A stretch of DNA of 64,000 nt from Ruditapes philippinarum (taxonomy: Eukaryota). A model generated the notes under the pieces. It did no database searches and was not told the DNA's origin. It was given only the letters and a program-made list of their open reading frames with translations. The first letter of the stretch is position 1. Each line of letters begins with the position of its first letter. Of the stretch, positions 17,798 through 46,213 are shown one piece after another. The translations under genes and the position numbers were made by a program. The stretch is from assembly GCF_026571515.1 (NCBI RefSeq), contig NW_026852213.1:1-64000 (forward strand), in the 5' to 3' direction.

Positions 17798-18417
17798 CCC
17801 ATTACACGATATACACGCCTTTTAACGCCTTCATCACCCCCACCCCCTTTTGTTGTCTCAAAAGGTGAAAAAATGTCTTATTTAGGCCCCCAACACTTGT
17901 TTTTGTTTGAGAAATGTTGTTAAAAAAGTGACCACTTTTTCGGCGCGGCCCCCAACCAAAAGTTACATCAGGGGGTTGCCAAAAGGGGGATGTGCCCCCT
18001 TCTGTTTGGGTGGTTTGAAGGGGGGCGGAGTCCCCCTTATCGCCAAGAAAATTTTGGACTTGTGAGAGGCTATAAATGACCCCAGATTGATCATAAGGTA
18101 ACGTGTAACCAACGCTTAAAAGCATTTGACTCTATTTCAATCCATTGAGAAGTTGCAGCACTTTGAAATCAATTTTGATGGAAAAAATCAACGCAAAATA
18201 GTGATGTTTGGCAATCTTGAGATATCCCCTCGTTGCCATGGTAACAGAAAATTTAAGCCTGAGCATGTTGTTGCAAGGGCAATGGTCCAGTCAACATTTG
18301 TGCCAAGTTTGATTAGTGTTGAAGCAGTTTTTATAGTATAATAGCAATTTGAACTTGTAACGGGAGACTTTTCAATGAAAACAGCCATTTTTCACAAAAT
18401 GCTCATGAAGTAATGGG
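17798..18417. mobile_element. piggyBac-like MITE
   Basis: TTAA|CCCATTAC...GTAATGGG|TTAA; empty site in the paralogous spacer near 9330. Confidence 0.75.
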
Positions 18418-28099: not shown

Positions 28100-30050
28100 C
28101 ACGAAGTTCATACCTTTTTAAGTACCCATAAATTTCTGTTGAAAATGAAAAACTCTCCCATTATCAAACTATATATTTCTTCAAATTAAACAATGACCTA
28201 ATAATTTGTTGTATGCATGATACACAAACATGTCTTATCTTTAAAGCAAATTTTCAGACTATTAAAAATGTTTCCAAACAGTATCTGTTGAATACAGTGC
28301 TTTGATAAAAGAAAAATAAACATCTGAAGTTTAAAATAGAATCAACGTGAAAAAATAAAGATATTCTAAATGCGTATTATTTGAAATGAAATTTCTAAGA
28401 TAACCTAGAATATAATTTATTGTTTTCGAAACAATGGCATTATTTTAATGACATGGGAAACCTCAAGAAAATAGATATATCTAAACGGTTTGATTAATTG
28501 GTACTTTGATGGATTGTATTTTGTTAGCATATAAATTATATTCAAATTGTTTAAGATGTACAAGTTACGGATGGGTGTGAAAAGATAAACGAGTTTGTTT
28601 TGTGGTTTTTTGTTGAATGTTTTAACATTTTTACATCAGCACCCTCTTCGAATGTTTATATTTTCGTTTTAGATGTTTTTATTCACGGTGTAAAACCGTA
28701 ACCACAAATCACCACAACCACCAGTCGAATCTGCAACAGTAATGCCTTTATTTTATGAATGAAAAGTGATAGAGTATATACTTTAAGATAAGCAAAAAAA
28801 AACAACGTTTACAGAACGCAAAATTTAAATACAGTTAAAAACATCCGTTCCTATCGAATTTCATGTGAACGCAATAACTGCAGAACTGAATTGAATGAAG
28901 CTATCAATCGTGAATGCAAAAAAGTAAGAAAGCATTTTTAACAAGATTATAATTGAAAAATAACAAAGAGATTAGGAAACAAAAACATCTTATTTGAAGA
29001 GGAAATATGACTAAAAATAAAGATAAGTAAAATATATTTTAATAAAGGATCGTTGTTTTTCTGTTCTATTTACTATGTTTACATTTTATCTTGGTGCCGT
29101 AAAAACTACTTTCAATATTTTATGACCTTGGTCCTCTTTTGAAGAATTTTATTTTTAGTGAATGAGGTGATGTGTAAAACATTTAGATCTACCGCCTTTC
29201 AAAAATAATGGTCTTGAGATAAAAGAATTAATGGCTTAATATATCAAACATGAAACAATATAGAAATGCTTTATTGTTGATAAAAAACGCATGTAATCGT
29301 GGATTGTTATAATTCCTCCTTCTAAAAGTAATCATTATATAACATGAATACTTGAAAACAAGAAACAAGCACAGATAATATTGTGACCATGTCAATTCTA
29401 TTTTTGATATCCCTTGAACAGAAATGAGGATATGAATAACACTTTATATAATTTGGCATTAACAAATCACATAATATCTTTAAAAAAAATATTCCTATCT
29501 TGGTTTACTACACCTTTAGTTTATACAAATAATTTTACTTCGATTGTGTTGAACGCTATTAGCTTATTGAAACACTCGAATCCGTTGAAGAACCAGTACA
29601 AAGCAACGAGTGTAAAGTTCCTTGCTCAAGGAAACAACGGCTTGCCCCCGACAGGGTTTTAACCCAGGCGGTCAGTAATCCTACGAATACTAGTCAGACG
29701 GATCGACCACTCGACCACGCCGCCACACCATTAACGTCACTCATTCGTATTGGCACTTATTCTTTTTTCGATCAGATCATTAAGTATGCCTAATGCAAAT
29801 TGTATCACATAACAAGCACAAAATGCTACAATTGCCATAGGAAACAATTGACATAAACAAAATTTATAAAATAATAATTTCCATTGATTTCGGTTTTATT
29901 CAAGACAATCATGTATAACAACAACCATTAACATCAGCACTGTATGTAAATATTACGTAACACAACAGCAATATGGCAAATGTTATAATCTCCGACAAGT
30001 AGGACATAAAACATGCTGAGCATTAAGAAATATATAATAATTGTACTAAT
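28100..30050 (+). pseudogene. Fragmentary LRR-like pseudogene, copy 7
   Basis: 28160-28450 resembles 25520-25810, and 29880-30035 resembles 26245-26355. Confidence 0.35.
29510..29730 (-). mobile_element. tRNA-derived SINE (CORE-like family)
   Basis: A-box-like GTGGTCGAGTGG head and TCCTTGAGCAAGGAACTTTA body; related copy at 52805-53020. Confidence 0.65.
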
Positions 30051-31795
30051 TAATACGCTAATTTCTTGACAAAGTTATCACTTAATGTATAAAGCCTATT
30101 ACATTGAATAGGTAATTTTCGGTTCTCGCAATAACTGCAGAGCCAAATGTCATTTAGTACATAAAGATTTTAGCATTCACGAAATACGGATTATCTCCCT
30201 TCCTTCTTTATTAACATGTTACACTTTGAATGACAAGTATTATAATAAACTGATACTAGTACCACACAAACGTTGATCTTACCGACGTAACCAAACAAAT
30301 TTGTTTTACGGTAACAGATCTAAAGCGACTTAAAACAAGCATTCCAAACTATGGAAAAACATTAAATTTTTGTATTCTTTCGTTGCTTATCTTATTTCTT
30401 TTCATTTATTGATGTTTTAAAAATTTTATATAGAGTCAACATCGCAAAGCAGTTACTTCATTGTAGTGAGTTCTGTAGAATTTGAACTGCAATCTGAACT
30501 TGAACGTTCCATGTAGATTCAGAGTAATTGAACGTTATATAAACATTATATAGACCTTTAATCAATTTCACCCTGGCCACCATTAACACAATCCATTCAT
30601 GTCCAATCCATGGTATATTAACAGGTTCATTTAAAGGAAAGTTCATGTAGCGTGTTTCACTAGATGCATATGTATATGTATCTCACAAAGGATGGGAAGA
30701 TAGTTGTTCAAGTCTCCGGCCGATGTCTGGTAAAACTATCAAGAAATCGTTGCACCTTCCCAACTTCTGGTTCTGAAATGTCAACAAAAGATGATATTTA
30801 TGCATTATGATTTATGGTCGTAACATGGTGTACATTTAAAAGACATGTACAAATACTTTTTATATCCTATAGTTATAGACGATAAATAATTTGCTTAAAT
30901 CATAATTTGCCTAAATTTGAATCACACATGTCACTAAATGTCCTAAATTCAACTATCCAGGTTTGGATATAAAATTGTAGCATGTAAATATTAAATACAT
31001 AATCTTGCAAATACACTGATGATACCAAGAATTGTTTCTACCGTCAGAAATTGTTAAATTTTTATTCTAATCTTCTTCTATATATATCCACCTCCACCCC
31101 AATTTTTTCTATACGGGGTCCCACTGGGTGTCAATCGTAATGCCATGTACATATAGATGGAAATTATGGCTGACTACATCCTATGAATTTTGATCTCGCT
31201 TGCTGAACTTTAATTGATTTTATGCTATTTCTTGTTTTAATTGTGTCCTGTTTCATATTCTACCATACATTCCTGAAGCATTTCGAAAGTTAATTGGCAA
31301 GTCCTGTACTTCCTTTACTAAATACATTATTTATTTACGTGCGTTACTATATATACATAATGATAGACTTGTGACAGAAACTTAGAGCAAGATAAGTTTG
31401 CATATTTACCACTTTTAGAACTCTCTATACTCTATATATTGCCGGTTGCTCAGTTTGATAAACAATGACAACAAAAATTTACAATATACGACACTCTTCA
31501 TGAAATGAGATGGCTTCAAAGGCACCGATGATGTATTGAGAGCAGCTGCAAATGCTTGGAAAAGCTTTGAGTGTGTGATGGTTGACGCCATCGCTTTAAC
31601 TATATGCGCCTAACTAAGTTTGCTTAGATATGCATGTGCTGGTTAAGAGTTGTTTAATTGTTATAGTTTTAAACTTAAAAAGATTATCGATTCTGTCTGT
31701 AAGTATTTTATGTGGTAAGATAGTGTTGGGTTTTTTTATATTTCTAGAGTAATTTCAGATATTTCTTGAGAATGAAGTGCGTCAGACCGGTACAT

Positions 31796-32022
31796 TTAGC
31801 AAGACATTGATAATAAAATGGAAGCAGAATTTTCACATATCCCTGTAAGAAATCCTGACAAAGATAAAAAATACGTAGGAATAAAGATGTGGAAGTTTTT
31901 ACCAGAGGAGGCAGACGTGGAAGATGGAGCAATGGTATGTCTTGTGTTTATCTCTGTATGAGCTCTGTGTTCCTCTATGTTGTAGGTGTCGTCACCACTC
32001 TCACTGTGCATTGATGCCATAA
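31796..32022 (-). CDS. LBP/BPI-like terminal exon (Ser/Thr linker plus hydrophobic tail)
   Basis: Phase-1 ttattcag acceptor is in frame with ORF 31796-32047; ends ...SSTSASSGKNFHIFIPTYFLSLSGFLTGICENSASILLSMSC. Confidence 0.6.
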
Positions 32023-35000
32023 CTGAATAAATCAAATAAACTATCATTGTTGTAATATGGTCGGTTACACAAATAACGAAATGTATACATCATTACTTCA
32101 TCTGTTCAGCTGTTCAGCAATAATAATAGAATAAAACATCATCATGCAACTGTTTTGCAATACGTTCGATTACACAAATTACGAAATATATACATCATTT
32201 GTTCATGTATTAAGCTACTCAGCAAAATTCTACATACTCAAGACATGAGAAATATAAAGACATAATCCTTATATTCATTTTTTTTATTGTTGATTAATTA
32301 GTGCGACAATAATGATTGTCAAAATCAATTTTAACATCTAAATCTACATATTTATCTTCACAACAACATTTGAAGAACGCAGCATTCGACCAAATACGAA
32401 CCTATACACAAACAAGACGACGCCAAAACTTAACACACAGTGTGATTAACAGCGGTAAAAATGATTATGTATTGCATTGACATAATGATAAACATTATTT
32501 ACATTGTATAAAAGCGCTGGTTCTTACATGTTTTTTATCTGTGTGTATTTTCTTCACAGTAATGTATCCTTTATTTCATTTTCAAAAGAACAACCTATAG
32601 GCTGATGAAATTCAAATACGAATTAATTCCAGCACGTATGTTGGGCAGTAATTTCCTGCTAAAACTTATCATTGTGTGAAAGGCTTCCGTTCTTTTATTG
32701 ACTTATCGTACAATATTACAGACTGACTCGATGTCTACTTAACGCAAGGAACATGACTGTCAAGATAATTGCAGAAGACTGGCGTGTAGAAATATTAATG
32801 AATAATTTTTTGGCAGAAAACAAGCATTCTTCTAAAATTAGCGTCAGGCATCGCGTGCCAGATTGAGTGTAAAATATATGTTTATCAAATTGACCTTTGC
32901 ATAACGCCTGTCTGGATGCTTCCAGATTGGCATGATTCAAAATTTGATATACATATAAAAAATATTGTTGATTTTTTTTATGAACTTCATAACGTCAGAA
33001 TTTCCCTATATTTCACCAATGGCATGTATTTTGTTATAGAAATTTTCAATGTACAATTCGATCAGTGGTAAAGCATTTTCTGTTTTGCTGATAATACGAG
33101 ACAGAAAACATCAATGTCTTAAAAGGATACACTGTACATATGAAAATAATCCAAATAACATAATGCAAAGGTGATTGATGTGAGTAAAAAGCGTTAAGTT
33201 GATGTTTTAAAAATAATTAAACCTAAAAAAAAAACATTTCGAAATTGTATATAAAAGCGTAAGAGCAAATCATATATTTGTTGAATTATTCCGCCCAGAT
33301 CACACCAGAAACCCTAAGTTATACATGAAATTTACTTTAAATATCATTGATATGCTTGGATTTTAACAGTACATTGAATCTTATAGAAATTGTAATGTGT
33401 GGAAAATAAAATCTTTAAGTATGAATTGAACTTATTGATTTCAAATGAGCATATACTTTTGACTAATGTTTTGTAACAAATATCACTGCATATTATCGAA
33501 AGGACATATAACAAAATAGTTATTTTTTGTTCACTTTATTAAGATAAAAATTAAGAAAGCATTATTTTTTACATAAATAAATAGGTATTTATTTAAAGAC
33601 CTATTTATTTAAAGTGTCCCTAACAATATAATGACATCGATATAAGATTTAAAAGAACATTATTGCTGCGTAAACACAATAAATATAATCCAAAGACTTG
33701 AACAAAATGAAATGAAGCATGTAATTTATATGAACACATACTTTTGCTAAAATTGTCAAAAACGAAATCCCTAAAGAACGTTGTGAATGGCAAAATTGAA
33801 AAATGTTGCAGGATTGGTTTGATTAAGCCTGTTTATTGAAGGCTGTGGAAAGTAAATGAAACTACAGTCCATCAACGTGGCACCGAATTAAGTACAATTC
33901 ACCTTTTGAACACGGAATGGTGCAATTTTGAATGTAGAAATATCCAAAGTTGTGTTCATACGGCGATTATCAAGTAACCTCTTTTAATGTGACACTTTTG
34001 TGCCAGTTCATATAAAGCGGCATTTGGTCCTAGAGTAAAAAGAGTGTGTACCGTAAACTGGAAAACAATGGGCACATCTAAATAAATGAGATCAAAGGTA
34101 ATGAAGACTGTCTGAGATAAAATTTAAAGTTTCGGGTTTTTTTACTACTTGTATAAAGTATAGTACATACCTGTCAGTGCTGACAACAATATTTGACCAT
34201 CATCTTGAACAGCTTCTTGTATCACTTTTGCTATCTGAAACCAAGGCAACGGTTACTATGATATCAAATAAAGTTAGATGATATTTGAATGTGTGATATA
34301 ATTATTATGTTAAAGGACTCTTGCATCTAATCTATATAAACAGCTGTAAAGACATAGAAATAGAGAAATGTCTTAAAACTGACCTCTTTTGGGTACACAT
34401 TTGTGTTTTATTTGTAAAAGATGTAAAACAGTGTTAAAATATTCTCATTATTAATTCAACTTAATAAGTCTTTGCTATTTTCATTCGTTTTGTTTTAAAC
34501 TCATTTTTCATACACATGTACTTGTCAACATGTTATGTAAGTTTGCTGTTGGAAGTATGTCATACAGAACGATTCATTTAAAAAAGATGTTTGTTTTATG
34601 TAAATTTACACATTTTAGCTTTAAACACATACACTAGTTGTATTCTTTTTTCTGATATTCTATGACATTTTCTGGATGAAACAAATTAAATAGGGGGCGC
34701 TTGAAACAAAATAAATCATTAAATTTCGTTTAATTGGCATAGTACATATTGCAGGTAAATCAATACAAAGTGCCAAGAGCAATATGTAGTCTTCATGACA
34801 ATTCGTATGGAAATCAATTATCATGCTTGACTAAACGAAAACATTACAAATCTCTTATTTCAAGCAAGAAACGGTATTTTATAGATCTATTGCGAGTATA
34901 TAAAATCTGGGAGGGAGAGAGAGATCTGCGGTAATGATTACATAGCGACAAGTTAAACACTCAGGCAAAGTGTGTCTCCTCAAAAAGATTAACGTCTTTC

Positions 35001-38000
35001 ACAATCCAGACATGTGTTGACTTTGAAATAGTTGGCCTAATTTTACAAAAAGCAAATGTTTAAAAGGTGCACATTTGATAAAGTTATTCTAAAATGTTTA
35101 AAAATAGATTATCTAAGCACGAACTTTGTGGAGCATAAATATCCATATGTGTACATGTATATGCATTCAAAATTAGTTGTTTTAAAAACTAATAGGAGCA
35201 TACATTATTCTAACAAGCCAATATATCATATTATAGCCTGCAAGTGACATTTAAGTATTTTACGGAATAAGATTATTTTATATGCGGAAACTATTCAACT
35301 AGTTTGCGGAACGATGGTTGTTCTACTCGGGTGACTGTTCGTGCCTGAAATATAGCACGGAAATGCAAAACAATTAACCACCCGGCATAGGACGCCTCTT
35401 ATTTAATATTACCTGAGCTTCTAAATGGCGTCTGTAGACCTTTATGTACAAAGATGTTAAAAACTGGCACAGTCTTGCCGCGCCTCCCTGAAATTTAACT
35501 TTTATAATGCCAACAGTGCATGTGACGTCATGCGGAAGTGGGCGGTGTCTGTGGTGATGGGTCGGGCGATGTTGATTGTGATGTCGGCTGCGACGCGGTG
35601 GTGAAGGTTGTGATTCTAAATATAAAAAAAATCTATATAAAAATTTAAATCACATAAACAATACAAACGATACAACGCATCACACATGAAGTAATAGTTC
35701 TGTTCTGTTTGTATATTAATCAATGCATAATATATGCGGAATATTCCGTATGGTATCTATGTTTATTCCCTATGGTATATGTGTTAATTAAACGGTAATA
35801 AGTCGTCCTTGCCTTATACAAGTATTTCAATAAAGTATACAATGCATTAGGAAAATATATATGTGAAACAATTTAATACAGATAGATGTAAAACAGAAGA
35901 GGGTAAAAATTATAATAGTAAGAAATGGTCTTCATCGACTTTCTATATACATGTTTATTCTATAAAAAAAAAGGACAGCGCCATTTTGTATTATTTACAT
36001 GTTATTATATGAAATTATGTCAATAATAGAATATACAAACAACAGATGTCGAATGCTTGTAAACTATTACATAACTTTTGTTTAGAATTGTTTTCGTATT
36101 ACCATTCTATGTTGCATTTATAAAGAAAACCCTTACAAACGCAACAATAACTCACCTAATGCCAATTAATTATCAGTAAACACTTTCTACAACTTATACC
36201 ATGCCACTATAATCAAACTTTATTATCTAAATTAAATTACTTTAAACTGTTATAAACGTTGGCAATCACATAACTCGAGCATTTCTTACAGAAATAAAAA
36301 AAAATCTATTAATCATTCGTACTGCGTAGGAAAACATTGTCGTCTCTGAAACAACAGTGATTAATAATTAATATAATCAAATTTGTCCTTGTGTTGTGAT
36401 AATAAATACCTAACTTGGTCACTAACCTTAATGGACTAATTGTCAGCATATGGTATAAATATAAGTATCTACGTAAATGAGTATATACGAAGCCATAATA
36501 TCTTATAAATGAATAATAAATAGTCTGATATACCGGGTATGTCATATGGTATAGAACTATGCTTAACAAAAAATCATGATTAAATAACGTCGATAATTTA
36601 AGTAAAAATAAAATACTTGGGTATCGAGAAGTATAAAAGAAATAATAATTAAAATTATAGCAATACTTGAAATAAGTAGTTGTCTTAGGTTCAGAGACTG
36701 GTATCCTTATCAGTAACAAAACATTTATGACAAGTCAAGGTTCCTAAATTATGTGCATATTATATCGATTTATATTATAAATAATTTCATATTATCCGGA
36801 CATCTTCATATGATTGCTTACCTGTACTGTTGTCTTTGATTGTCAGACATATGGCACCAAGATCGAACACAAACTCTCCAGTCTTGTTGTAGCCAAGTCT
36901 GTCAAGGAAAATAGTGAAATAATCTTATCATGTTTTTACCATGTTATAAAATATAACCATCTTATATAAAGAGAAATCATAACATCAATATCAAATAACA
37001 GAGAGAGATACGGAAACCTTATCTTGTGTGACATTAAGACTACGGCTTTGTAAATTGAATTTGGAAACGGTGGTGCTAAGCTACTAATTTAATTCAATTA
37101 ATTTGGGATTTGCACATATATTTTATGATTTAATTATTACCACCTTTTTAGTAGTGAAACAAGTGTCACCTAAATACTGGATATTCAGATTTGATATTAA
37201 AATAGCATAATTATTTCAATTTTGTTCCAATAAGGTTGATTTAAGAACTTCATATTACTTAAATCCAACTCATATCAAGAAATTAACATTTATTTTAGTA
37301 TTAAAATTGCGAAAAAATATATGTTGACAAGATTTTATGAAAGTTAATAAGGACAGAGGTGTGTCTTTTATCTTTTACGATGAAATACCATGACGGAAGT
37401 AGGTGTGTTTGTTGACTGGTAGAAATCATTCAAATATATTAGAGTTAATGTAGCAATAAATAAGGTCGAGTAAATTATTAATGACACACTTAAAATGGTT
37501 ACAAGCACGTTACTAATATTATTGTACTGTGAATGTTATTACTAATTGTCATTCATCAGAAACCTCGATAGAACAATAAACTAGATACATGTAACAATAC
37601 TTTATTACTTGTTGTTATACAATTAATATTGCTATTTATTATATACATTGTACTTGTAACTTAAATATGGAGATATATTGATGAAAAAAAATGCGTATTT
37701 TCAATGCAAATAAAATAATTTTCACTGCAGTGAAACATATTTTCCGTATTTTCAATGGTGTCTTGCCGGACTACTTTCTGCTTAATTCGGCCAATATACA
37801 AAATTTAAGAGAAAGTCTTCAAAAAAGAGATAACAAAAGTATATGATAAACAGAAAATTCAAGTTTTTTTTTATATAAATACAGGATTTATTATCATCTT
37901 GTGGTATGAAACTTATCATATTTCATACCACTTGATGAAAATAAATCCTGTGTTTATAATTCTTGAATATCGTCTGTGCATTCTACGTAGTGTTTATCTA

Positions 38001-41000
38001 AATATAATGAGCGTATATTAGAATATTAAATTTTGTACAGATTAGTCTGAAACTTAATATAATATAATAGTGTTTCAGGTTTGGATAATTTTGTATGACT
38101 TGGACAATAAAATTGGAAGAAAAACAAGAACAATGATTATCAAATGGAGGAAATGTTTTAATCAGAGACATAGATAACATGTTATCTACATCTCTGTTAT
38201 AACCATTTACATGTATTAACATACCAATTGTCACTTATGAATTGTTTCCATTTAAGTCATTTTGGATATTTGCCCGGTAAAAAAGACACGTATTTCTTCC
38301 ATACTTAGTCTATCAACAAATAATATCCTAACAGCTCGTATTCGGCTTAATGCCAAAATGACGTAATCAGACGCAGTACGTGACATATACCATTAAGAGG
38401 GTAGAACGCCATTAACTCTATTACGATAATTACCTATCAAGCACTGATGACAATTTCTTATCTCTGAGATAAATAACGGGCCAGGAAAAAAGCGCCATTA
38501 GTATACCATAAGTATATGCTTTTAATCCAGTCTGTTATTTAATCACAATGCGATGCCTAGTTAATGATGAGGCGAATTAAGAAGTCAAGTGCGATAAAGC
38601 CAAGTTCGTGTCTTAGTATTACGATATATAGTCTTGTACAATTATCATTGTAAAATGTATATAAAAAATGAGATTTTAGATGTTAGGTCAATGTAGGTTT
38701 AGGAAAATGAGATGAAGCCATGTGTATTGCAGATACAAAAGTTTATCTTAATCTATATGATAACAAATGAAAAGCCTAATGTTTAGTGTCAATGTATCGA
38801 AGGATATCGAGATCATATCGTTTCAACGATAATTCGGGTAGCGTGAATGTATAGAGAATAAATGAGCCGTGTCACGACAAAACCAACATAATGCGTTTGC
38901 GACCAGCATGGATCCAGACCAGCCTGAGCATCCGCGCAGTCTGATCAGGATCCATGCTGTTCGCTATTAGTTTCTCTACTTGTAATAGGGTTGGTAAGCG
39001 AACAGCATGGATCCTGATCAGACTGCGCGGATGCGCAGGCTGGTCTTGATCCATGCTGGTCGCAAACGCACTATGTTGGTTTTGTCGTGATGCGGCTAAA
39101 ATGATCAAGCACTGTTTAGATAGTTACAAACTTCACCATTTATAGAAAATAAATGAGCAGTCAATGTTTTGGTAGTTTCAAACGGTGCCATTTTTTATGA
39201 TTTTTCGACAATGAACAACATCAGTTAACGTAACCAATTAGTTATAACACATTTGAGCTGGTCTGGATCCATGCTGGTCGCAAACCCAGTATGTTGGTTT
39301 TGTCGTGACGCGGCTCATTTATTTGTGAAACAAGTATCTGCAATTCATGTTAATCATTTTCGAGACCGATTCTTCATGAACTTAACCATGATGGTGTCAT
39401 ATGGGAAAACATGTGTCATATGGGGAAACATGGCCAAGTATGGCTCGGAGCCAACACGATCGCGATCACTTTAACCACTAAACCACATTTTCCCTTCTCC
39501 CCGTAACTTCAATGGCCAAACATATTTATCAATATAAGATTGTTGCAGCTTTCTTTCCCAGAATACCGAGGACATACCTAAAAACTGGACATGCTATGAA
39601 GATGAGCTTGACGTGTCTCGAAGACAACAATCTCTCCAGCAATACATACTTGTGTACTTGTTAACATTTGCAGAACATAGACCATCATCGAAATGAACCT
39701 TTAATTCTTATAACTGAATATTATGTCAAATCTTTACTTTTGGCTCCGAAAGATGTTTTTATCGTTTATTTTGTTGCAAAAAATCAACATATAGGAATAA
39801 CTAAAATGTGACAAAATGCGTGTTAGAAATGGGCGGCAATGTTTAAGGATCTCCTAATTCATCATCGGAGAATTGGTAGGAACTGTTTTATTTTTTATTT
39901 TATTTTTTGTTCTAACAGGTGTTAAAACATGATCTGAGTTATGCAGTTTATTGCTTTTCGATACCATTATCAAATTTTATGAAATTCATATTTCAACTTG
40001 GGCGAGTTTATTAACAAAAATTGTTTTATATCCGTGGGAAATTTGATTTAGATGCAAACATTGAGGTAATAATTTGTGTCATTTATTGCATGTTACAGAC
40101 AGATATGCAAAGAATGGTTTTGATAAATGACACTTCTGTACAAGAATTTATGATGAATTTAAATTTTATAAAAAATCATTTCATGCCGCAAATCCAGGAG
40201 ATTTATAAACACATTTTGTAACATGTATAGATACTACATTGTATTTGTTTCTGTGGAAAATATTGTGTTTAGAATTGAGAAAATCAAAATATGTTCATGA
40301 CTGATCAATGCGACTATTTAACATCGTAATGAATGTTATTCCATTATTCATATAATGTTAATAATTAAGTGTTTTCATAATGGCCGTGTTATTGGGCCGA
40401 AGACTGTCATATTAGCCTGAGGCCGAAGGCTAATATGAAAGTCTAAAGCCCAATAACAAGGTCATTATGAAAACACTTAGTTATTGACATTTTTTTTAAT
40501 TAACTACTGTGTTATGTATCTAAAAAAAACTTATGTGAAATTCCGTTGTGAGGTATTGCAAATGAGATTCTTGTTTTAAAAATGTCTCGAAACCTACTTT
40601 GCAGCAATTCAAAATGACGACTATTTTTAAATGAAGAAAAAGCAGATTGATAATGACCGAGCTGGAGAGCCAATCAAAATTCTCCAATCTCATAAAAGCA
40701 GAGTTTTTCATAAATTCCGTACTTTTTGCATAATGGCCTTGTTTTATGTTCATAATGTCCTAGTGAACTACATATTAGCCTAACATTAGAAGTGAAAACG
40801 TGCCTTATATTGAAACGTGAATTTATAAGGAAACATAAGAAGTGAACGTAGGTTAATCATGAATATTTCATGTATATATTTAGTTTTCCTTTTCAAATGG
40901 AATATGGTAAGTGATTTAGAGTGTACTTTTCAGAAACAAGATAGATCTAATAGTCGCGTCACGACAAAACCAACATAGTGGGTTTGCGACCAGCATGGAT

Positions 41001-44000
41001 CCAGACCAGCCTGCGCTTCCGCGCAGTCTGATCAGGATCCATGCTGTTCGCTTACCAACTCTATTACAAGTAGAAAAACTGATAGCGAACAGCATGGATC
41101 CTTATCAGACTGTTCGGATGCGCAGGCTGGTCTGGATCCATGCTGGTCGCAAATGCATTATGTTGGTTTTGTCGTGACGCGGCTCATATGTCTCAGTCTA
41201 TAACTATGTGACTGGTAAACATTGGATTTAGCGCCTCTTTAAAGAAACAACTAAAAAGCATGTTTACCAACCCAATGGTTAAATGTGTTCATTAAATATT
41301 CTGCAAAAACTATAAGCACAACATGCTTAATGGTTTGTAAATCTCTTTTCAGAAATTCCACTATTGATGATAAACGTCTACACTGCCTATAGCTAGAAAC
41401 AGACAAACTTACATATTGTAAAGTCGGCATTATAAATTAGGTACACACCAAAAACGTATATGAGTACATGGTGTATATGGGATTTTTCATACATTTGAAC
41501 GACTTTACGTATATAAACACATTAACAATGCCATGCCATTCTGTCGGGTTGTAATATTGTCGCTCCGCCGCTACAACAGCACGAATTGTTGCGTGGACGC
41601 TAAGTCAGACTAGTAAATAGCTGTGTCGTGTTGGCGACATCACCTTTTGTTTAAGTGTTCTTGCGTGGTATAAAGATGGTACCGTGTCATAAATCAGAAA
41701 GACAAATAAACAGTCATAAATGTTCGCGCCAAAACGACAACAACTTATATTTATACTTACACCCCAGGTCTCTGTATATTGTAGTTCCCATGAAGTCTTA
41801 GAGCACCGTTGTTTGCTATAAACAATTTACCAGTGTTTGTTACTTTAGGCCAATGAACATGGACAATGCGCATTCTGGAAAAAAAGAATAGTTCGACAAT
41901 CAGATATATCATACACGAGAGTTAATCTTACAGTATATACCAACCTTATAAACATTACAGAAAAAGTATATTAAACAAATTTACACATAATACAAGAGCA
42001 ATATGCTCAGTAGTTTTAGTTGTTTGTTCTACAGGTATATTATAACACATTTTTGTAAGCAGTAAAAAAGTAAATACAAATATTAACCCTTAACCTTCTG
42101 AATGTCTTAATTGGACTTATCCAGCTACTTTTTACCATCCATTTTAATTTTTGGTGGTATTGACTTGGAGATGAAAATTGTAAGTTGATACAGCATGGTC
42201 CGACTGCAGGGATGTACAGGCTGACCTGGCTCTATACTGGCGGCAAAGGCTGGTCAATGTCGGTTCCAGCATTGGGTGGGTTGATGGAATTGTTTGTTAA
42301 AGGAGATTCTAACATTACTTCTTCCAAAGCATTAAATATACATGACAAACATATACCAGGAGCTCCTGGCGTGTCACATTGATATTCATGGTAGAAAATA
42401 AGTGTGAAACCATCTTGATTATCAATGGCATACGCCGAAAGCCTGTGGTATATACATGTACATACATTCATTTTGAAACTTTATAAAAGGACAGAAAACT
42501 TCCACTTATTTGTCAAGCTGGAAAAACAATTACTCTACTCTCACTAAGCAATCAATATTTTACGATTCATAAAGCTCTATAATTCTCTACATGAAGAAAT
42601 GGCATAATGGTTGTTTTGCACGAAATTTGCGTGCCTGTAGATGACAACTGTAATCAGATAATGTTGATATTTTCAAATCTGTTTTCAAATAAACTGTTTT
42701 CAAAAGCTTAATCACACCATGTCACCAACAGACAAGGGAAAAAATAAAGTTAAAATAATAGAATAATGAGTCTATATTTGAAACATACTGTTTTCTGTAG
42801 AAGAACATGAAAGACAAAATATATAATTAAGTATACTATTTTATGTAAGAGTATTTAAGGAAATTTAAGATATAATACATTCTTTAATGACTTACTATAA
42901 TTTCTGTGATTATTAAAACAAACCTAAGTAAAACGATATCGAATGACTGCTCATAAAATTTAACATTTGCCTACCCTATTTTTTTCATCCAATTTTCTAT
43001 TTATTTATTAAACGATTTGCAATTTGGTCACATTATAGCATCCGAGATTTAGATGGGTATATATGGAAGGGTTAATTGTTTGGGCTGTCCGTAATCTGAT
43101 CTGTAATCTTGAGGTTGAAGAGAATGTTATGGAGCTTTTTTCTTTGTTGTTGTTTTTAATATATTGCATGTGAGTTTTTGTAACGCTTGTACAAGTTAGT
43201 TAACATTATTTATATTATATTATTATACTTAAAGCTGATAACCTTTTAATAACAAATGTCGTAGATAAAAGAACAAATGAGCCGCGCCATGACAAAACAA
43301 ACATAGAGCGTTTGCGACAATAATGAATCCAGACAAGCCTGCGCATCCGCGCAGTCTGATAAGGATCCATCCTGTTCGCATACAAACCCTTTTACAAGTA
43401 CAGAAACTGACAGCGAACAGCATGGATGCTGATCAGACTGCGTGGATGCGCAGGCTGGTCTGGATCCATGCTGGTCGCAATGCACTATGTTGGTTATGTC
43501 ATGGCACGGCTCAAATGATTACAAGACGTTTGACAAACGAATTTGCCGATGTCAAACAGGAAGTACACTCCAGAGGACAATAAATATTTTCATTATTCTA
43601 CATGTGTATGGACATTGATTGATATGCAATGATTTAAGCAATGTAGTAACTTAATTAAAGTCATATTGTTAACGCATACTTATCGCATACAAAAAAGACA
43701 ATATTTTGCCACCAGTACATAGCCATGACAGCCTTTGCACTCATGGAGGTTGAGCTCTACTGTTGGGTGACCAACTTGAGAATTTCGTCCTGATATCCTT
43801 AAGTTGTCTAAAGGCAGTTCCAAAAATGAAGTTGTGCAAGTCGTTTGGGGTTTACAAACCAAATATCAGTTTATCGCGGAAATGTTTTATCCTATATGTG
43901 AATTGCCGCAAAATAGTGTCCTATTAGTTACATTATATTTTACAAAGCAATTTGAATGCTTGAGTATACCTTTTTCGTAATAATAGTTTAGACATGCGAT

Positions 44001-45584
44001 TCCAGATTAGGAGATGTTTATTTTGATTTTTGTAATGTTTTATTTATTTATTGTTGATATCAAAACGTACTATATATTCGTCTGCTTTCCCTATTATCAA
44101 GCAGTATGTATACATGTATATTTCATATACTCGAAAAATCATTTGACAATCATGTATAAGAAATCTAAAACAAGAGATTTAAACTTCAGACTTACTCTGT
44201 GAACCTGTAGTGAACCTTGCCAACTTGGCCAACCTGGTCAGGTACCACATGTTCGAGCAGCTTGTCCTGTAAATTCTCCATCAATTTCTGGTAATACAAT
44301 TTATACAAATACGAAATTAAACAACCCATCTCTATTATTTACTTTATCACGAAAATTAAAACTACGTTGTATTTTATAAACAGATGCTGCATGGAATGCT
44401 AGCTTTTCAATTATACTGGAATTTGTAAAGCATTATATGTATGTATATATTGTATTAAAGTGGTAACATACTGTTGATAATGATTCAAACTTCATTTGCA
44501 TGTACTTTATGTTGTTAATTGTTATACTATTACAATAGTGTTGCTGTATACAACATAGTGTATAAAAACGATAAAGTATAGAAAATACCAATCGCAACTT
44601 TCCGGCCCTTCCGTCAGTCTTCGGATACAGGCACATATTATTGATAACAGCCGAGATGTTCCGATTGAGAAAAAAATCACATTACAACAGATCGAGATAT
44701 TTATTAATTTATAAAATAATTTATTGTGTTTGAGGTTTTCACCTTTTTGTACTAATAGTTCCACCATATACAAATGACCAATGACTGCCTACTGTGTTTG
44801 AAGTCCGGAGTCTGAGTCTGTGCAAATCTGTTCTCAACAATTATGACCAACTTTTATCATCTGAATGAATCAACCATACCTGATTAGCTGGAAATATAAT
44901 GTGTTGCTGACAGTTGTCATTATAAAGAAATAGTTGCATACAGTTTATATTCAATATTTGTAAAAAAAAAAGTTAAAACAGTAATAGTAATCAACTTTCG
45001 CAATTTCTAAATGATTTCAATTACACGTGTATATATAATAATATAAAATTTACAACGCAAAATAATACAGTTAAACGATATACTTGTATACAACGGAATC
45101 ACTTCGGAACAAGCGTACATTTACGCTCAAAGCATAAGACGCAGAATAATTGATGAAAAGGTCCTATCGGACATTGTGACACACGAGTTATATGGATCAA
45201 AACGCTCAAGCATTATATGTATCATAGAATGTAAACAGATATCGATATAGTCTCAAAAATAAACCCATTTCATCAATAGTGCAATTATTACTATCACTTT
45301 TATAGAGTGGTTTGGGCTGTTTCACTATGATTGAAAAAAAAATCAAATTAAGAGTAGAGTCCAATAAACGTATGAAATTTAATAAGAGTACAGTTCAATG
45401 TCTAATTATGCCGGACGCGTACACATACTACCGCAAACATGTATGGACAAGATGCTCAAAAGATGCGTGAGCATACCCTATTAAAATGCGTACATTTAGG
45501 TGTACACACACATATTTTATTATCTGAGTCATTCTTTGAACGTATATGAAGACATAATAACAATACCGTAAACAGAAGAGCCAT
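31796..45584 (-). CDS. LBP/BPI (TULIP) N-terminal-domain-like protein, single domain, about 294 aa, 7 predicted exons
   Basis: Phase-compatible GT-AG exons: 45584-45477 (uncertain), 44287-44196, 41874-41761, 36898-36822, 35615-35413, 34234-34171, 32022-31796. The translation LQDKLLEHVVPDQVGQVGKVHYRFTEMRIVHVHWP...LRLHGNYNI...KTGEFVFDLG...VTCTVGIIKVKFQGGAARLCQFL...YRRHLEAQIAKVIQEAV...LLSALT follows the motif order of the BPI/LBP N-domain. Confidence 0.7.
34171..34234 (-). CDS. LBP/BPI-like exon
   Basis: IAKVIQEAVQDDGQILLSALT; tttcag acceptor, CAG|GTATG donor. Confidence 0.78.
35280..35368 (+). mobile_element. SINE central-domain fragment
   Basis: Degenerate match to the body of the 45952-46213 family. 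Confidence 0.5.
35413..35615 (-). CDS. LBP/BPI-like exon with His/Arg-rich segment
   Basis: GC-rich open frame SQPSPPRRSRHHNQHRPTHHHRHRPLPHDVTCTVG...LEAQ; CAG|GTAAT donor. Confidence 0.78.
36822..36898 (-). CDS. LBP/BPI-like exon
   Basis: LGYNKTGEFVFDLGAICLTIKDNST; CAG|GTAAGC donor. Confidence 0.78.
37874..37958. repeat. Near-perfect inverted repeat (about 38-bp arms)
   Basis: tataaatacaggattta...gtggtatgaaa pairs with tttcataccac...taaatcctgtgtttata. Confidence 0.85.
38862..39100. mobile_element. Palindromic MITE (about 240 bp)
   Basis: About 100-bp inverted arms, ATGAGCCG...GACCAGCATGGATCC...GCTGTTCGCT. Confidence 0.9.
39256..39319. mobile_element. Palindromic MITE, partial arm
   Basis: Matches the right arm of the family. 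Confidence 0.8.
40354..40491. repeat. Long inverted repeat (about 65-bp arms)
   Basis: aagtgttttcataatg...catattagcct pairs with aggctaatatg...cattatgaaaacactt. Confidence 0.85.
40951..41187. mobile_element. Palindromic MITE
   Basis: Full copy; its central spacer is inverted relative to the 38862 copy. Confidence 0.9.
41761..41874 (-). CDS. LBP/BPI-like exon
   Basis: tttttttccag acceptor; MRIVHVHWPKVTNTGKLFIANNGALRLHGNYNIQRPG; GTAAGT donor. Confidence 0.78.
42083..42284. mobile_element. Degenerate TTAA-flanked MITE
   Basis: TTAACCCTT...GGGTTGA ends; related remnant at 62720-62902. Confidence 0.55.
43277..43514. mobile_element. Palindromic MITE
   Basis: Full, more diverged copy. Confidence 0.88.
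44196..44287 (-). CDS. LBP/BPI-like exon
   Basis: KLMENLQDKLLEHVVPDQVGQVGKVHYRFT; GA|GTAAGT donor. Confidence 0.75.
45477..45584 (-). CDS. Candidate first coding exon (signal peptide) of the LBP/BPI-like gene
   Basis: MALLFTVLLLCLHIRS...; donor AGG|GTATGC, phase 0; an upstream tttcag acceptor and a GAG|GTGAGT donor near 45665 suggest a UTR exon. Confidence 0.4.
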
Positions 45585-45951
45585 ATGATTATGAAAATCT
45601 GAAATATCATTACGCGCGCTTGAGGACAATTGTACAGGAAACATATGTTACGTAAGATCACTCACCTCATGTTACAATCCAAATGAAATCCTAAAGGAAC
45701 TACTTTTTCCCCTGAGTGAAATAGTCAATACAATACGTGTAACATACTATATTGTCATCATTTAATCTCTGTATGAATATGCCTTTAACAGATTGATCGA
45801 TATATTTAGCTGGTCTGACTCGAAGTTTTCCATTTTCACGCTGATCGAGAGTTTGTATCGATTATTGCGCTGTGAAATCTTCCTCCGTCGCTGGCGGTCC
45901 TGTAACCGAATGCTCCGCGGTACGGTAAATAAAATAAATAAATATGTAAGT

Positions 45952-46213
45952 TTGTTTGTTTGTTTTGGGTTTTACGTCACATCGACAGATAATAGGTCAT
46001 ATCGCGACGTTCCAGCTTTACTGGTGGAGGAAGACCACAGGTGCCCTTCCGTGCAATATTTCAGACACGAACGGGCACCTGAGTAGAACCACCGACGTTC
46101 CGTAAGCTAGCTGCATAGCTTCCTCACATGAAAGAATCCAAGGTCCCTGTCGGGATTTGAACCCACAGCGGTGAGGGGCAAGTGGTTTGAAGCCACTCGG
46201 CCACGGACGCCCC
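45952..46213 (-). mobile_element. tRNA-derived SINE
   Basis: A box GTGGCCGAGTGG, B box GGTTCAAATCC, (AAAC)n tail, 12-bp TSD AAATATGTAAGT. Confidence 0.9.

What the first reader, a model, noticed from the sequence alone, without database searches (positions are those of the whole stretch)
31796..45584. Single-domain LBP/BPI-like gene with a probable GPI-anchor tail
Seen: six to seven short exons, mostly missed by the ORF track, splice in phase into a protein of about 294 aa. Known: canonical LBP/BPI proteins are secreted and have two TULIP barrels. Inference: this protein has only the N-terminal barrel. The last exon encodes a polar linker, a small-residue run (SSTSASSG) and a hydrophobic end, which suggests a membrane-tethered LPS/lipid-binding protein, functionally reminiscent of a CD14-like co-receptor.
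Basis: partly seen in the sequence, partly recalled or inferred. Interest (0 to 1): 0.78.

Follow-up and report, generated by a model that had tools for sequence, protein, structure and literature searches.

The report
Truncated BPI-like clam gene, no anchor
This is a real, expressed Manila clam gene for a small protein that keeps only the first lipid-binding barrel of the BPI/LBP immune-protein family, but the proposed signal peptide and GPI-anchor tail are not in its mRNA.

Summary

**Splicing.** Spliced transcript contigs confirm the junction 34171>32022. They also show that the "last exon" is internal. It ends at 31903, directly after SSTSASS, and splices to 30772. The hydrophobic "GPI tail" (31902-31796) is therefore intron.

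**Identity.** Seven exon translations are exact substrings of RefSeq "uncharacterized protein LOC132752632 isoform X2" of Ruditapes philippinarum, 242 aa.

**Single BPI-like barrel: supported.**
- PF01273 is the only Pfam family hit. It is below the cut-off (22.0 vs 28.8 bits) and is matched by 11 of 13 homologues.
- The AlphaFold model (pLDDT 66.7) matches the N-terminal barrels of LBP and BPI best (Z 16.0 and 15.5).
- Five consecutive intron phases equal those I read in a canonical BPI/LBP gene of the same genome.
- There is no second barrel.
- The second cysteine of the family's conserved disulfide is missing in 13 of 13.

**Distribution.** Named homologues come only from Venerida and Myida clams.

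**Verdict.** This is a lineage-restricted, probably non-secreted, single-barrel BPI derivative, already annotated but unnamed. The scan did not find it on other DNA.

The parts
44196..44329 (-). First coding exon. Acceptor at 44287 (used in isoform X2, whose 5' UTR exon lies upstream and is unmapped). ATG of X2 at 44281 (MENLQD...). In-frame ATG of isoform X1 at 44329 (MGCLIS...), reached when the exon runs on upstream unspliced. Donor after 44196, phase 2.
   Evidence: sequence and splice sites; exact substring of P0012 at residue 1. P0025 (isoform X1) begins with the upstream in-frame extension.
41761..41874 (-). Coding exon, 114 nt, phase 2>2. Encodes the beta-strands MRIVHVHWPKV...NGALRLHG.
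   Evidence: substring of P0012 at residue 30; tblastn-type match of P0001.
36822..36898 (-). Coding exon, 77 nt, phase 2>1 (LGYNKTGEFVFDL...).
   Evidence: the loose end at 35617 equals window 36824 onward..
35413..35615 (-). Coding exon, 203 nt, phase 1>0. Holds the His/Arg-rich loop (about 35613-35530), then two strands and the start of the long helix. It is 48 nt longer than the canonical paralogue's exon 5 (155 nt).
   Evidence: in contigs of X1 and X4.. Single copy in the assembly. The loop is disordered in the model.
34171..34234 (-). Coding exon, 64 nt, phase 0>1. Same length and phases as exon 6 of the canonical paralogue. Ala replaces the disulfide Cys at codon 2.
   Evidence: joints 35413>34234 and 34171>32022..
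31903..32022 (-). Coding exon, 120 nt, phase 1>1. Variable, polar, predicted disordered. Ends with SSTSASS. It is an internal exon, not the last one.
   Evidence: joint 31903>30772 in X1 and X4; depth falls to zero below 31903 in the contigs. (donor G|GTAAAA)..
31796..31902 (-). This is the start of intron 7 read through in frame (35 codons to a stop).
   Evidence: skipped in both spliced contigs. (read-through translation). Absent from P0012, P0025 and all homologues.
30708..30772 (-). Last coding exon: 21 polar residues (PEVGKVQRFLDSFTRHRPET) and TGA at 30710-30708. A 3' UTR probably runs on to about 30088 or beyond; its end is not fixed.
   Evidence: the contigs reach 29 and 49 nt into it, so they stop before the stop codon. 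(reading); substring of P0012 at residue 223, running to its end. The downstream depth is not linked to the gene by one contig.
45477..45584 (-). It is unsupported as coding sequence.
   Evidence: absent from all isoforms and homologues. (no similarity to the canonical exon 1). Its donor phase is 0, against phase 1 in the canonical gene.

Best explanation
The locus is Ruditapes philippinarum LOC132752632. It has seven coding exons on the minus strand (44329/44281 down to 30708) and encodes 242 aa (isoform X2) or 258 aa (X1).

The protein derives from an LBP/BPI-type gene. It has lost the signal-peptide exon, the first beta-strand, everything after exon 7 (the central sheet and the second barrel) and the second cysteine of the family's conserved disulfide. 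It has gained a disordered His/Arg-rich loop and a short, conserved, polar C-terminal motif (QRFLDSF).

Shown: the gene structure, its transcription, the single BPI-like TULIP barrel, the absence of a hydrophobic tail, and conservation across Venerida and Myida clams.

Inferred: it works as a soluble carrier or sensor for a hydrophobic ligand held between the curved sheet and the long helix, as other TULIP barrels do. It most likely acts inside the cell, because it has no signal peptide and lacks the disulfide. The basic His/Arg loop would be a candidate contact for anionic head groups or metal ions. It is not GPI-anchored.
For: Gene structure.
- joints 35413>34234, 34171>32022 and 31903>30772, all GT..AG on the minus strand, in contigs of X1 (1080 nt) and X4 (875 nt).
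- exon 5 is single-copy in the assembly, so the spliced form is not a retrocopy in this assembly.
- all 7 exon translations are exact substrings of P0012, in order (1, 30, 68, 94, 161, 183, 223 of 242).
- 7 of the 8 genome matches of the Mercenaria orthologue are collinear on this contig. The eighth is noise (E 0.48).

Family.
- PF01273 is the only Pfam family hit: P0012 22.0 bits, P0025 24.6, P0001 21.1.
- 11 of 13 aligned homologues hit it at E<=0.1, best 3.1e-7.
- Foldseek: the 7 matches at E<=0.001 are LBP, BPI, CETP and JHBP chains.
- VIA-align: LBP Z 16.0 (151 aligned, rmsd 3.5), BPI Z 15.5 (model 2-175 on BPI 23-188), CETP 12.6.
- Intron phases 2,2,1,0,1 after exons 2-6 equal those I read in the canonical gene on C1136. 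Exon 6 is 64 nt in both.

No anchor, no secretion signal.
- first 20 aa have mean hydropathy -0.35 and last 20 aa -1.13. The maximum 19-aa window is 0.88 for P0012, and 0.88 to 1.28 in the 9 family proteins tested.
- none of the homologues has a hydrophobic start or end.
- Disulfide: the residue aligned with the second Cys is A, S, T or V in 13 of 13. The canonical paralogue has Cys there. The family disulfide C135-C175 is described in passages of PMC4620459.

Selection.
- 55 invariant columns and 48% mean column identity across 13 sequences.
- Three allelic 242-aa variants have intact reading frames.
Against: - Every Pfam score is below the curated cut-off of 28.8 bits.
- Exon-by-exon Pfam gave 0 hits for 8 of 8 pieces.
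- Exon-by-exon BLAST against the canonical paralogue found none of the expected exon pairs.
- hhalign of the family profile against the paralogue's exon 5 aligned the right place, but weakly (E 0.027, probability 1.8%).
- The profile found no PDB sequence at E<=10.
- The model is of middling confidence (pLDDT 66.7, pTM 0.51, from 13 sequences).
- The paralogue's exon boundaries are my own reading, without RNA support.
- The 5' UTR exon or exons were not seen. The contigs run 159 and 384 nt upstream of exon 2, but that part lay outside the stretch laid. A minor isoform with a signal-peptide exon is therefore not excluded.
- Only 2 of 4 runs showed the transcript. X2 and the raw RNA run X21, of which 4% was read, had no depth on the exons.
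- Ligand, localisation and function are all untested.
Confidence: 0.8

Rival explanations
1. One reading: a secreted, GPI-anchored single-barrel LBP/BPI protein. It would use a signal peptide from an exon at 45584 and a hydrophobic tail ending at 31796, and would act as a CD14-like LPS co-receptor.
For: The junction 34171>32022 is real. In-frame read-through past 31903 does give a small-residue run followed by a 35-codon stretch with a maximum 19-aa hydropathy of 1.38. The exon at 45584 is in phase with 44287.
Against: - Both spliced contigs leave the exon at 31903 for 30772, and contig depth below 31903 is zero.
- All 3 RefSeq protein accessions, the 3 further Logan proteins of the species and all 13 homologues end in the polar motif and lack the 45584 exon.
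- Hydropathy of 1.38 is low for a GPI signal or a TM segment.
Confidence: 0.03
2. The protein is secreted like other BPI-family members, either through a signal-peptide exon that every annotation and assembly has missed, or by an unconventional route. It would then act extracellularly on microbial lipids.
For: - The nearest relatives by fold (LBP, BPI, CETP, SPLUNC1, JHBP, Der f 7) are all extracellular by my recollection. Their titles are; their localisation was not tested here.
- The protein is basic (pI 9.17).
- The 5' exons of the transcripts were not seen here.
Against: - RefSeq models in 4 species (Ruditapes, Mercenaria, Mya, Dreissena), a GenBank model in Mactra and the transcript-contig proteins mostly start at the same Met (M-E/D-x-L-Q). 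This holds for 9 of 13 aligned sequences, and for cluster mates of 3 of the other 4.
- The one long N-terminal extension (P0021) is not hydrophobic.
- The family's stabilising disulfide is lost in 13 of 13.
Confidence: 0.12
3. It is a transcribed, decaying fragment of a duplicated BPI gene with no function of its own.
For: The gene is truncated at both ends relative to the canonical gene. Its Pfam scores are sub-threshold. Exon 7 is highly variable and disordered.
Against: - It is conserved with intact reading frames across two bivalve orders, with 55 invariant columns concentrated in the barrel and in the C-terminal motif.
- It is single-copy.
- Allelic variants stay open.
- Contig word depth is about 43-46 in two runs.
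Confidence: 0.05

Closest known systems
LBP / BPI (Pfam PF01273 N-terminal domain; mouse LBP 4M4D, human BPI 1EWF and 1BP1)
   Same: - These are the best structural matches (Z 16.0, 15.5 and 14.4, on BPI residues 23-188).
- PF01273 is the only Pfam family hit.
- Five intron phases and a 64-nt exon are shared with a canonical gene of the same genome.
- The first disulfide Cys is kept (C125).
   Different: - No signal peptide and no first beta-strand.
- No central sheet and no second barrel (PF02886).
- The second disulfide Cys is lost.
- An extra 16-residue His/Arg-rich loop.
- About half the size (242 aa, against 456 aa for the BPI chains listed).
- Pfam score below the cut-off.
BPIFA1/SPLUNC1 and latherin (vertebrate single-barrel BPI-fold proteins)
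   Same: A single TULIP barrel of about 200-250 aa derived from the BPI family. Structural matches Z 8.0-8.8.
   Different: They are secreted with signal peptides (recalled). They are structurally more distant from the clam protein than LBP/BPI is. They arose independently in vertebrates, whereas the clam gene keeps the intron pattern of a clam BPI/LBP gene.
Arthropod Takeout / JHBP / Der p 7 / Der f 7 single TULIP proteins
   Same: Single-barrel carriers of hydrophobic ligands. Z 8.3-11.5.
   Different: They are extracellular with signal peptides (recalled; the bioRxiv preprint 10.64898/2026.06.25.734463 was seen as a listing and the start of its abstract only). There is no detectable sequence relation here.
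SMP-domain proteins (E-Syt2, TMEM24, Mdm12/Mmm1): the intracellular TULIPs
   Same: Intracellular TULIP barrels without signal peptides. This is the closest analogy for how a non-secreted barrel might work.
   Different: Only weak structural matches (Z 5.3-7.0). No Pfam SMP hit. The clam protein has no transmembrane, C2 or other tethering domain.
CD14
   Same: Nothing tested here is shared.
   Different: CD14 is a GPI-anchored leucine-rich-repeat protein (recalled). The clam protein has neither an anchor signal nor that fold.

Membership tests
LBP/BPI/CETP family, N-terminal domain (PF01273) | Score at or above Pfam's gathering cut-off (28.8 bits) | tested here: not met
   P0012 22.0 bits (E 1.5e-4), P0025 24.6, P0001 21.1, P0007 15.8, P0002 15.6. 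It is still the only family hit, matched by 11 of 13 homologues at E<=0.1, best 3.1e-7. Three homologues carry a precomputed PF01273 mark.
LBP/BPI/CETP family, N-terminal domain (PF01273) | TULIP fold (curved antiparallel sheet wrapped round a long helix) most like the N-terminal barrel of LBP/BPI | tested here: met
   Model of P0012 from alignment A1: pLDDT 66.7. Foldseek: LBP 2.4e-6, BPI 3.0e-6. VIA-align: Z 16.0 and 15.5 on LBP 45-211 and BPI 23-188.
LBP/BPI/CETP family, N-terminal domain (PF01273) | Gene structure shared with canonical family genes | tested here: met
   Phases after exons 2-6 are 2,2,1,0,1 in both genes. Exon 6 is 64 nt in both. The paralogue's exon boundaries are my own reading, anchored by Pfam hits on that locus.
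LBP/BPI/CETP family, N-terminal domain (PF01273) | Conserved N-domain disulfide (human BPI C135-C175) | tested here: not met
   The first Cys is kept (C125, invariant). The position of the second is A, S, T or V in 13 of 13. The canonical paralogue has Cys there. The disulfide is described in passages of PMC4620459.
Canonical two-domain LBP/BPI proteins | Second barrel (PF02886) after a central sheet | tested here: not met
   Stop codon at 30710-30708, 21 codons into exon 8. None of the 5 PF02886 matches in the genome is on this contig. C-terminal exons of the paralogue find nothing in the window (best E 0.63).
Canonical two-domain LBP/BPI proteins | N-terminal signal peptide (secreted) | tested here: not met
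   Mean hydropathy of the first 20 aa is -0.35 (X2) and 0.25 (X1). No homologue has a hydrophobic start. No SignalP was available; this is hydropathy only.
GPI-anchored proteins | C-terminal hydrophobic signal after a small-residue omega site, present in the mature mRNA | tested here: not met
   The hydrophobic stretch is intron 7, skipped in both spliced contigs. The real last 20 aa have mean hydropathy -1.13. NetGPI was not available.
GPI-anchored proteins | ER entry through a signal peptide | tested here: not met
   As above.
SMP-domain intracellular TULIP proteins | SMP domain by sequence, plus membrane-tethering modules | tested here: not met
   No Pfam SMP hit. Structural Z only 5.3-7.0. 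No TM-like window.

The most novel reading that the evidence does not exclude
This family would be the first intracellular branch of the LBP/BPI lineage. It would be a cytosolic, disulfide-free, single-barrel derivative confined to neoheterodont clams that carries or senses a lipid, possibly bacterial LPS or lipid A, inside the cell. Its His/Arg-rich loop would act as a pH- or metal-dependent membrane contact. In Ruditapes an alternative start (isoform X1, MGCLIS...) fits the N-myristoylation/palmitoylation pattern as I recall it. That would tether the barrel to the cytosolic face of a membrane: a membrane-tethered BPI after all, but from the other end and the other side.
Probability: 0.25. 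Interest if true: 0.6.

Novelty: new variant of a known kind. Interest (0 to 1): 0.35.

Why it matters
BPI/LBP proteins are the classic extracellular LPS-handling proteins of animals, and single-barrel offshoots are so far known as secreted proteins (SPLUNC, latherin, Takeout/JHBP). This clam family is a conserved offshoot that has lost the signal peptide, the stabilising disulfide and the second barrel. That suggests the BPI barrel was re-used inside the cell in a group of commercially important clams.

It is currently only an "uncharacterized protein" in RefSeq. Naming the fold gives a direct handle for lipid-binding and localisation tests.

For the scan, it is a cautionary case: an in-frame read-through of an intron produced a convincing but false "GPI tail".

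Tried and rejected
**Searches on exon pieces.**
- Exon-by-exon Pfam on 8 stop-free pieces gave nothing. Only four of those pieces held true exons. My guesses at 45459-45584, 43683-43865, 42235-42480 and 41440-41604 were later shown not to be coding exons.
- Own-genome scans with PF01273 and PF02886 found canonical genes on other contigs but not this gene.
- BLAST of window pieces against the paralogue loci was swamped by interspersed repeats.
- Exon-by-exon BLAST against paralogue A found none of the expected pairs.
- A word search with exon 5 alone found no candidate. The length window makes that uninformative.

**Searches with the family.**
- A profile word search with A1 added only fragments.
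- A PDB sequence search with the profile gave 0 hits.
- hhalign against the paralogue's exon 5 was weak.
- No paralogous exons lie elsewhere in the window.
- Rfam found nothing in 30000-46000.

**Literature.** Searches listed no paper on a signal-peptide-less single-domain BPI-like protein of bivalves. That rests on listings and abstract starts only. Supplements were closed, so differential-expression tables that may list LOC132752632 were not seen. One search (Cys135/Cys175) found nothing. led to PMC4620459, of which I read passages.

All full-length analyses (Pfam, alignment, fold, hydropathy) used database proteins returned by the tools. The link to the window was made exon by exon.

**Not obtained.**
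- The 5' UTR exons of the transcript. The single read-laying run covered 30000-35999 only.
- Tissue or condition of expression (run names are coded).
- SignalP, NetGPI or myristoylation predictors (none on hand).
- Model coordinates, so the Cys125-Cys142 distance and the cavity could not be examined.

Full report
**The region.** The window is AT-rich (GC 0.26-0.40 in 2-kb windows) and belongs to a 1.41-Gb assembly of 15,874 contigs. The finding describes a minus-strand, multi-exon gene from 45584 to 31796. The short exons are mostly invisible in an ORF list, so I listed all stop-free stretches of the minus strand and read candidate exons with their splice sites.

This raised the possibility that the hydrophobic "tail" was only an intron read in frame.

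**First family tests.** Pfam on eight candidate pieces gave no family for any of them, even at E<=10. Six-frame scans of the whole genome found canonical genes on other contigs (C1136, C14785, C1543, C587) but nothing on this contig (C700):
- PF01273 (N-terminal barrel): 4 matches.
- PF02886 (C-terminal barrel): 5 matches.

**RNA evidence.** The look-up of sequencing runs listed 24 runs of one coded organism. I laid three contig runs (X1, X2, X4, typed "RNA?" by the tool) and one raw RNA-seq run (X21) on window 30000-35999.

Two of the four runs (X1, X4) each hold one long minus-strand contig (1080 and 875 nt, word depth 45.8 and 42.8). These contigs contain 35617-35413, 34234-34171 and 32022-31903, and show three joints, all GT..AG on the minus strand:
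- 35413>34234
- 34171>32022
- 31903>30772

The exon it leads into, however, ends at 31903 and is spliced to a further exon at 30772. Contig depth between 31902 and 31800 is zero. The bin mean of 22.2 in X1 is what 97 exonic bases at depth 45.8 give.

X2 and X21 (about 4% of the run read) have no depth on these exons. Their silence shows only that the gene is not expressed everywhere.

Exon 5 occurs once in the whole assembly (1 match, the window itself). The spliced form is therefore not a retrocopy present in this assembly, and the two contigs are best read as mRNA.

The loose end above 35617 matches the window at 36824 onward. This places the next exon upstream at 36898-36822 and not at my earlier guesses.

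**The real C-terminus.** With the one base carried over from 31903, exon 8 reads E-PEVGKVQRFLDSFTRHRPET and then TGA at 30710-30708. The contigs end 29 and 49 nt into this exon, before the stop, so the stop rests on the protein evidence below.

**Finding the protein without joining exons.**
- The word search with exon 5 (67 aa) found no candidate. Its length window (about 37-117 aa) could not have found the full-length protein.
- The exhaustive phmmer search with the same exon found 9 proteins at E<=0.001. The best was a 239-aa protein at 92% identity, named by NCBI [quoted passage not shown].
- Word searches with that protein and then with an alignment gave 14 and 20 proteins. Among them was P0012, 242 aa, [quoted passage not shown].

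In one search each of seven window exon translations is an exact substring of P0012, in order, at residues 1, 30, 68, 94, 161, 183 and 223. Single split-codon residues lie between them at four of the six exon boundaries, and the last exon runs to the protein's end. The exon after 44196 is 41874-41761.

The window is thus from the Manila clam or something indistinguishable from it, and the gene is already in RefSeq, unnamed. All seven exons have AG|..|GT boundaries and consistent phases. The Mercenaria protein maps to the same seven places and to nothing else credible in the genome: 7 of 8 matches are here, and the eighth has E 0.48. The gene is therefore single-copy.

**The N-terminus.**
- Isoform X1 (P0025, 258 aa) starts 16 codons further up, at 44329, in the unspliced extension of the same exon (MGCLISYLYKLYYQKL-).
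- Three further 242-aa proteins from transcript assemblies of the species differ from P0012 by one residue each and start at the same Met.
- In the 13-sequence alignment A1, 9 start M-E/D-x-L-Q.
- Two begin a few residues later, and their cluster mates begin MENLQD and MESLQD.
- One is an alternative-first-exon isoform whose sister isoform begins MESLQE.
- One GenBank model has an 83-residue, non-hydrophobic extension.

If 45584-45477 were joined to 44287 it would be in frame, and a longer protein would have been called. That exon also shows no BLAST similarity to exon 1 of the canonical paralogue, and its donor phase differs (0 against 1).

I could not see the true 5' UTR exons.

**Is it BPI-like?** Four lines of evidence agree.

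*Pfam.* On the full-length database proteins, PF01273 is the only family reported, always below the 28.8-bit cut-off:
- P0012 22.0 bits, P0025 24.6, P0001 21.1, P0007 15.8, P0002 15.6.
- 11 of 13 members of A1 match it at E<=0.1, best 3.1e-7.

*Predicted fold.* AlphaFold2 on A1 gave a middling model (pLDDT 66.7, pTM 0.51) with these elements:
- a short helix, then strands over residues 16-88;
- a disordered stretch 89-121;
- two strands, 122-136;
- one long helix, 139-187;
- a disordered stretch 188-224;
- a short low-confidence helix, 225-236.

*Structural matches.*
- All seven Foldseek matches at E<=0.001 are LBP, BPI, CETP or JHBP chains, followed by Der p 7, Takeout and SPLUNC1.
- VIA-align gives LBP Z 16.0 (151 residues, rmsd 3.5), BPI Z 15.5 and 14.4 (model 2-175 on BPI 23-188), CETP 12.6, Der f 7 11.5, JHBP 9.4, SPLUNC1 8.6-8.8, and SMP-domain proteins 5.3-7.0.

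The match is to the N-terminal barrel and begins at about residue 23 of BPI, so the first strand is missing.

*Gene structure.* I read the first seven exons of the canonical gene on C1136, whose exons carry the Pfam hits.

| Exon | Canonical gene (C1136) | Window gene |
|---|---|---|
| 1 | 115 nt, phase 0>1 | not comparable |
| 2 | 100 nt, phase 1>2 | 92 nt, phase >2 |
| 3 | 123 nt, phase 2>2 | 114 nt, phase 2>2 |
| 4 | 71 nt, phase 2>1 | 77 nt, phase 2>1 |
| 5 | 155 nt, phase 1>0 | 203 nt, phase 1>0 |
| 6 | 64 nt, phase 0>1 | 64 nt, phase 0>1 |
| 7 | 92 nt, phase 1>0 | 120 nt, phase 1>1 |

(Window values.) Five consecutive intron phases agree and exon 6 has the same length. After exon 7 the two genes part.

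Against this stand several negative results:
- BLAST found no exon pair.
- hhalign of the family profile on the paralogue's exon 5 aligned the expected place (TVGhIKVrFhGGAA on NIDHVNFHFKGGMS), but at E 0.027 and 1.8% probability.
- The profile found no PDB sequence.

The sequence relation is therefore remote. The case rests on fold, the single weak family hit and gene structure together.

**What has been lost and gained.**
- *Lost: the second barrel.* The stop is in exon 8. No PF02886 match lies on the contig. The paralogue's C-terminal exons find nothing in the window (best E 0.63).
- *Lost: the signal peptide and first strand.*
[quoted passage not shown] The clam family keeps the first Cys (C125, invariant). 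At the second position, codon 2 of exon 6, it has A, S, T or V in 13 of 13, whereas the canonical paralogue has Cys. Another Cys (C142) is invariant, but I could not measure whether it could pair with C125.
- *Gained: a His/Arg-rich loop.* Exon 5 is 48 nt longer than the canonical one. The loop varies in length between species and is disordered in the model.
- *Gained: a conserved C-terminal motif.* It reads (G)xIQRFLDSF, with Q229, R230 and S234 invariant.
- *Exon 7 is degenerate.* In BPI it would encode the strands after the long helix. Here it is variable and disordered.

**No anchor.** For P0012 the highest 19-residue Kyte-Doolittle window is 0.88. The first 20 residues average -0.35 and the last 20 average -1.13. 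Across the nine family proteins tested, the maximum windows lie between 0.88 and 1.28.

**Distribution and selection.** Named sources are Ruditapes and Mercenaria (Veneridae), Mactra, Mya and Dreissena. Ruditapes and Dreissena share the clade Neoheterodontei; the orders of the other genera are from recollection. No oyster, mussel or scallop protein appeared. However, the exhaustive search used only exon 5 and the other searches are word-based, so absence elsewhere is not shown. A1 has 55 invariant columns and 48% mean column identity, and allelic variants keep the frame. This argues for a functional gene.

**How it probably works.** This part is inference. A TULIP barrel binds a hydrophobic ligand between the sheet and the long helix. 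This one has no signal peptide, no anchor and no stabilising disulfide, so it most likely acts as a soluble intracellular lipid carrier or sensor. The basic His/Arg loop is a candidate contact for anionic head groups or metals, and the C-terminal motif is a candidate partner-binding or capping helix.

Isoform X1 begins MGCLIS. As I recall the pattern (G at 2, small residue at 6, Cys at 3), this fits N-myristoylation plus palmitoylation. It is not seen in other species and was not tested.

**Literature.** Searches for bivalve BPI/LBP and for single-domain, signal-peptide-less BPI-like proteins listed nothing on this family (listings and abstract starts only; supplements closed).

**Verdict.**
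- The single-barrel BPI-like reading is supported.
- The GPI-anchor, secreted and CD14-like readings are refuted for the transcripts and annotations seen.
- The gene model is already public. The fold assignment and the loss of secretion features are, as far as my searches reach, not in print.

Noticed in passing
window 44287-44329 (minus strand): RefSeq isoform X1 (P0025) starts MGCLIS... in the unspliced upstream extension of the first coding exon. Gly2, Cys3 and Ser6 fit the N-myristoylation/palmitoylation pattern as I recall it. This start is not seen in homologues of other species.
   Followed up: partly
window 38816-39123, 40919-41208, 43218-43583 (both strands): Copies of an interspersed repeat with pseudo-ORFs (…SMDPDQPAHPRSLIRIHAVR…) sit in the introns of this gene, in both orientations. 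The same repeat lies in the introns of the canonical BPI loci on C1136 and C1543, at 65-95% amino-acid identity. It also inflated one 'open frame' of the Pfam genome scan.
   Followed up: partly
window 33792-33833: A 42-base element in intron 6 is covered in all four runs (depth 27-34 in contigs; raw reads too) by records whose flanks are unlike the window. Its minus-strand reading (…NRLNQTNPA…) recurs in the C1136 and C14785 loci. It is therefore a fragment of a common transcribed repeat, not part of the gene. There is no Rfam match.
   Followed up: partly
G000 C1136:317000-330000 (minus) and C14785:12000-31000 (plus); loci L010, L014, L018, L011, L015: Two canonical two-domain BPI/LBP genes are near-identical even in their introns (mostly 75-100% in translated pieces). 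They are either a very recent duplication or two haplotype copies kept apart by the assembly.
   Followed up: partly
window 58301-58939 (minus): A tandem array of roughly 166-base units. Its translated pieces match an array in C1136 (L010 5296-6254) at 78-97%.
   Followed up: no
window 54224-54985 and 55242-55805 (minus): Two long open frames (253 and 187 aa, Ser/Asp/Glu-rich) upstream of the gene on the same strand have no Pfam family. They are probably large exons of a neighbouring gene.
   Followed up: partly
window 30000-30650: Contig depth downstream of the stop codon is high in X1 and X4. It is also present at 30000-30120 in X2, which lacks the gene's exons. Part of this signal may therefore belong to a repeat or to another transcript rather than to the 3' UTR. 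The 3' end of the gene is not fixed.
   Followed up: no
window 17805-18391 (minus): Translated pieces are 78-91% identical to C1136 332016-332436 (L018). This is another dispersed repeat or transposon fragment in a locally GC-richer stretch.
   Followed up: no
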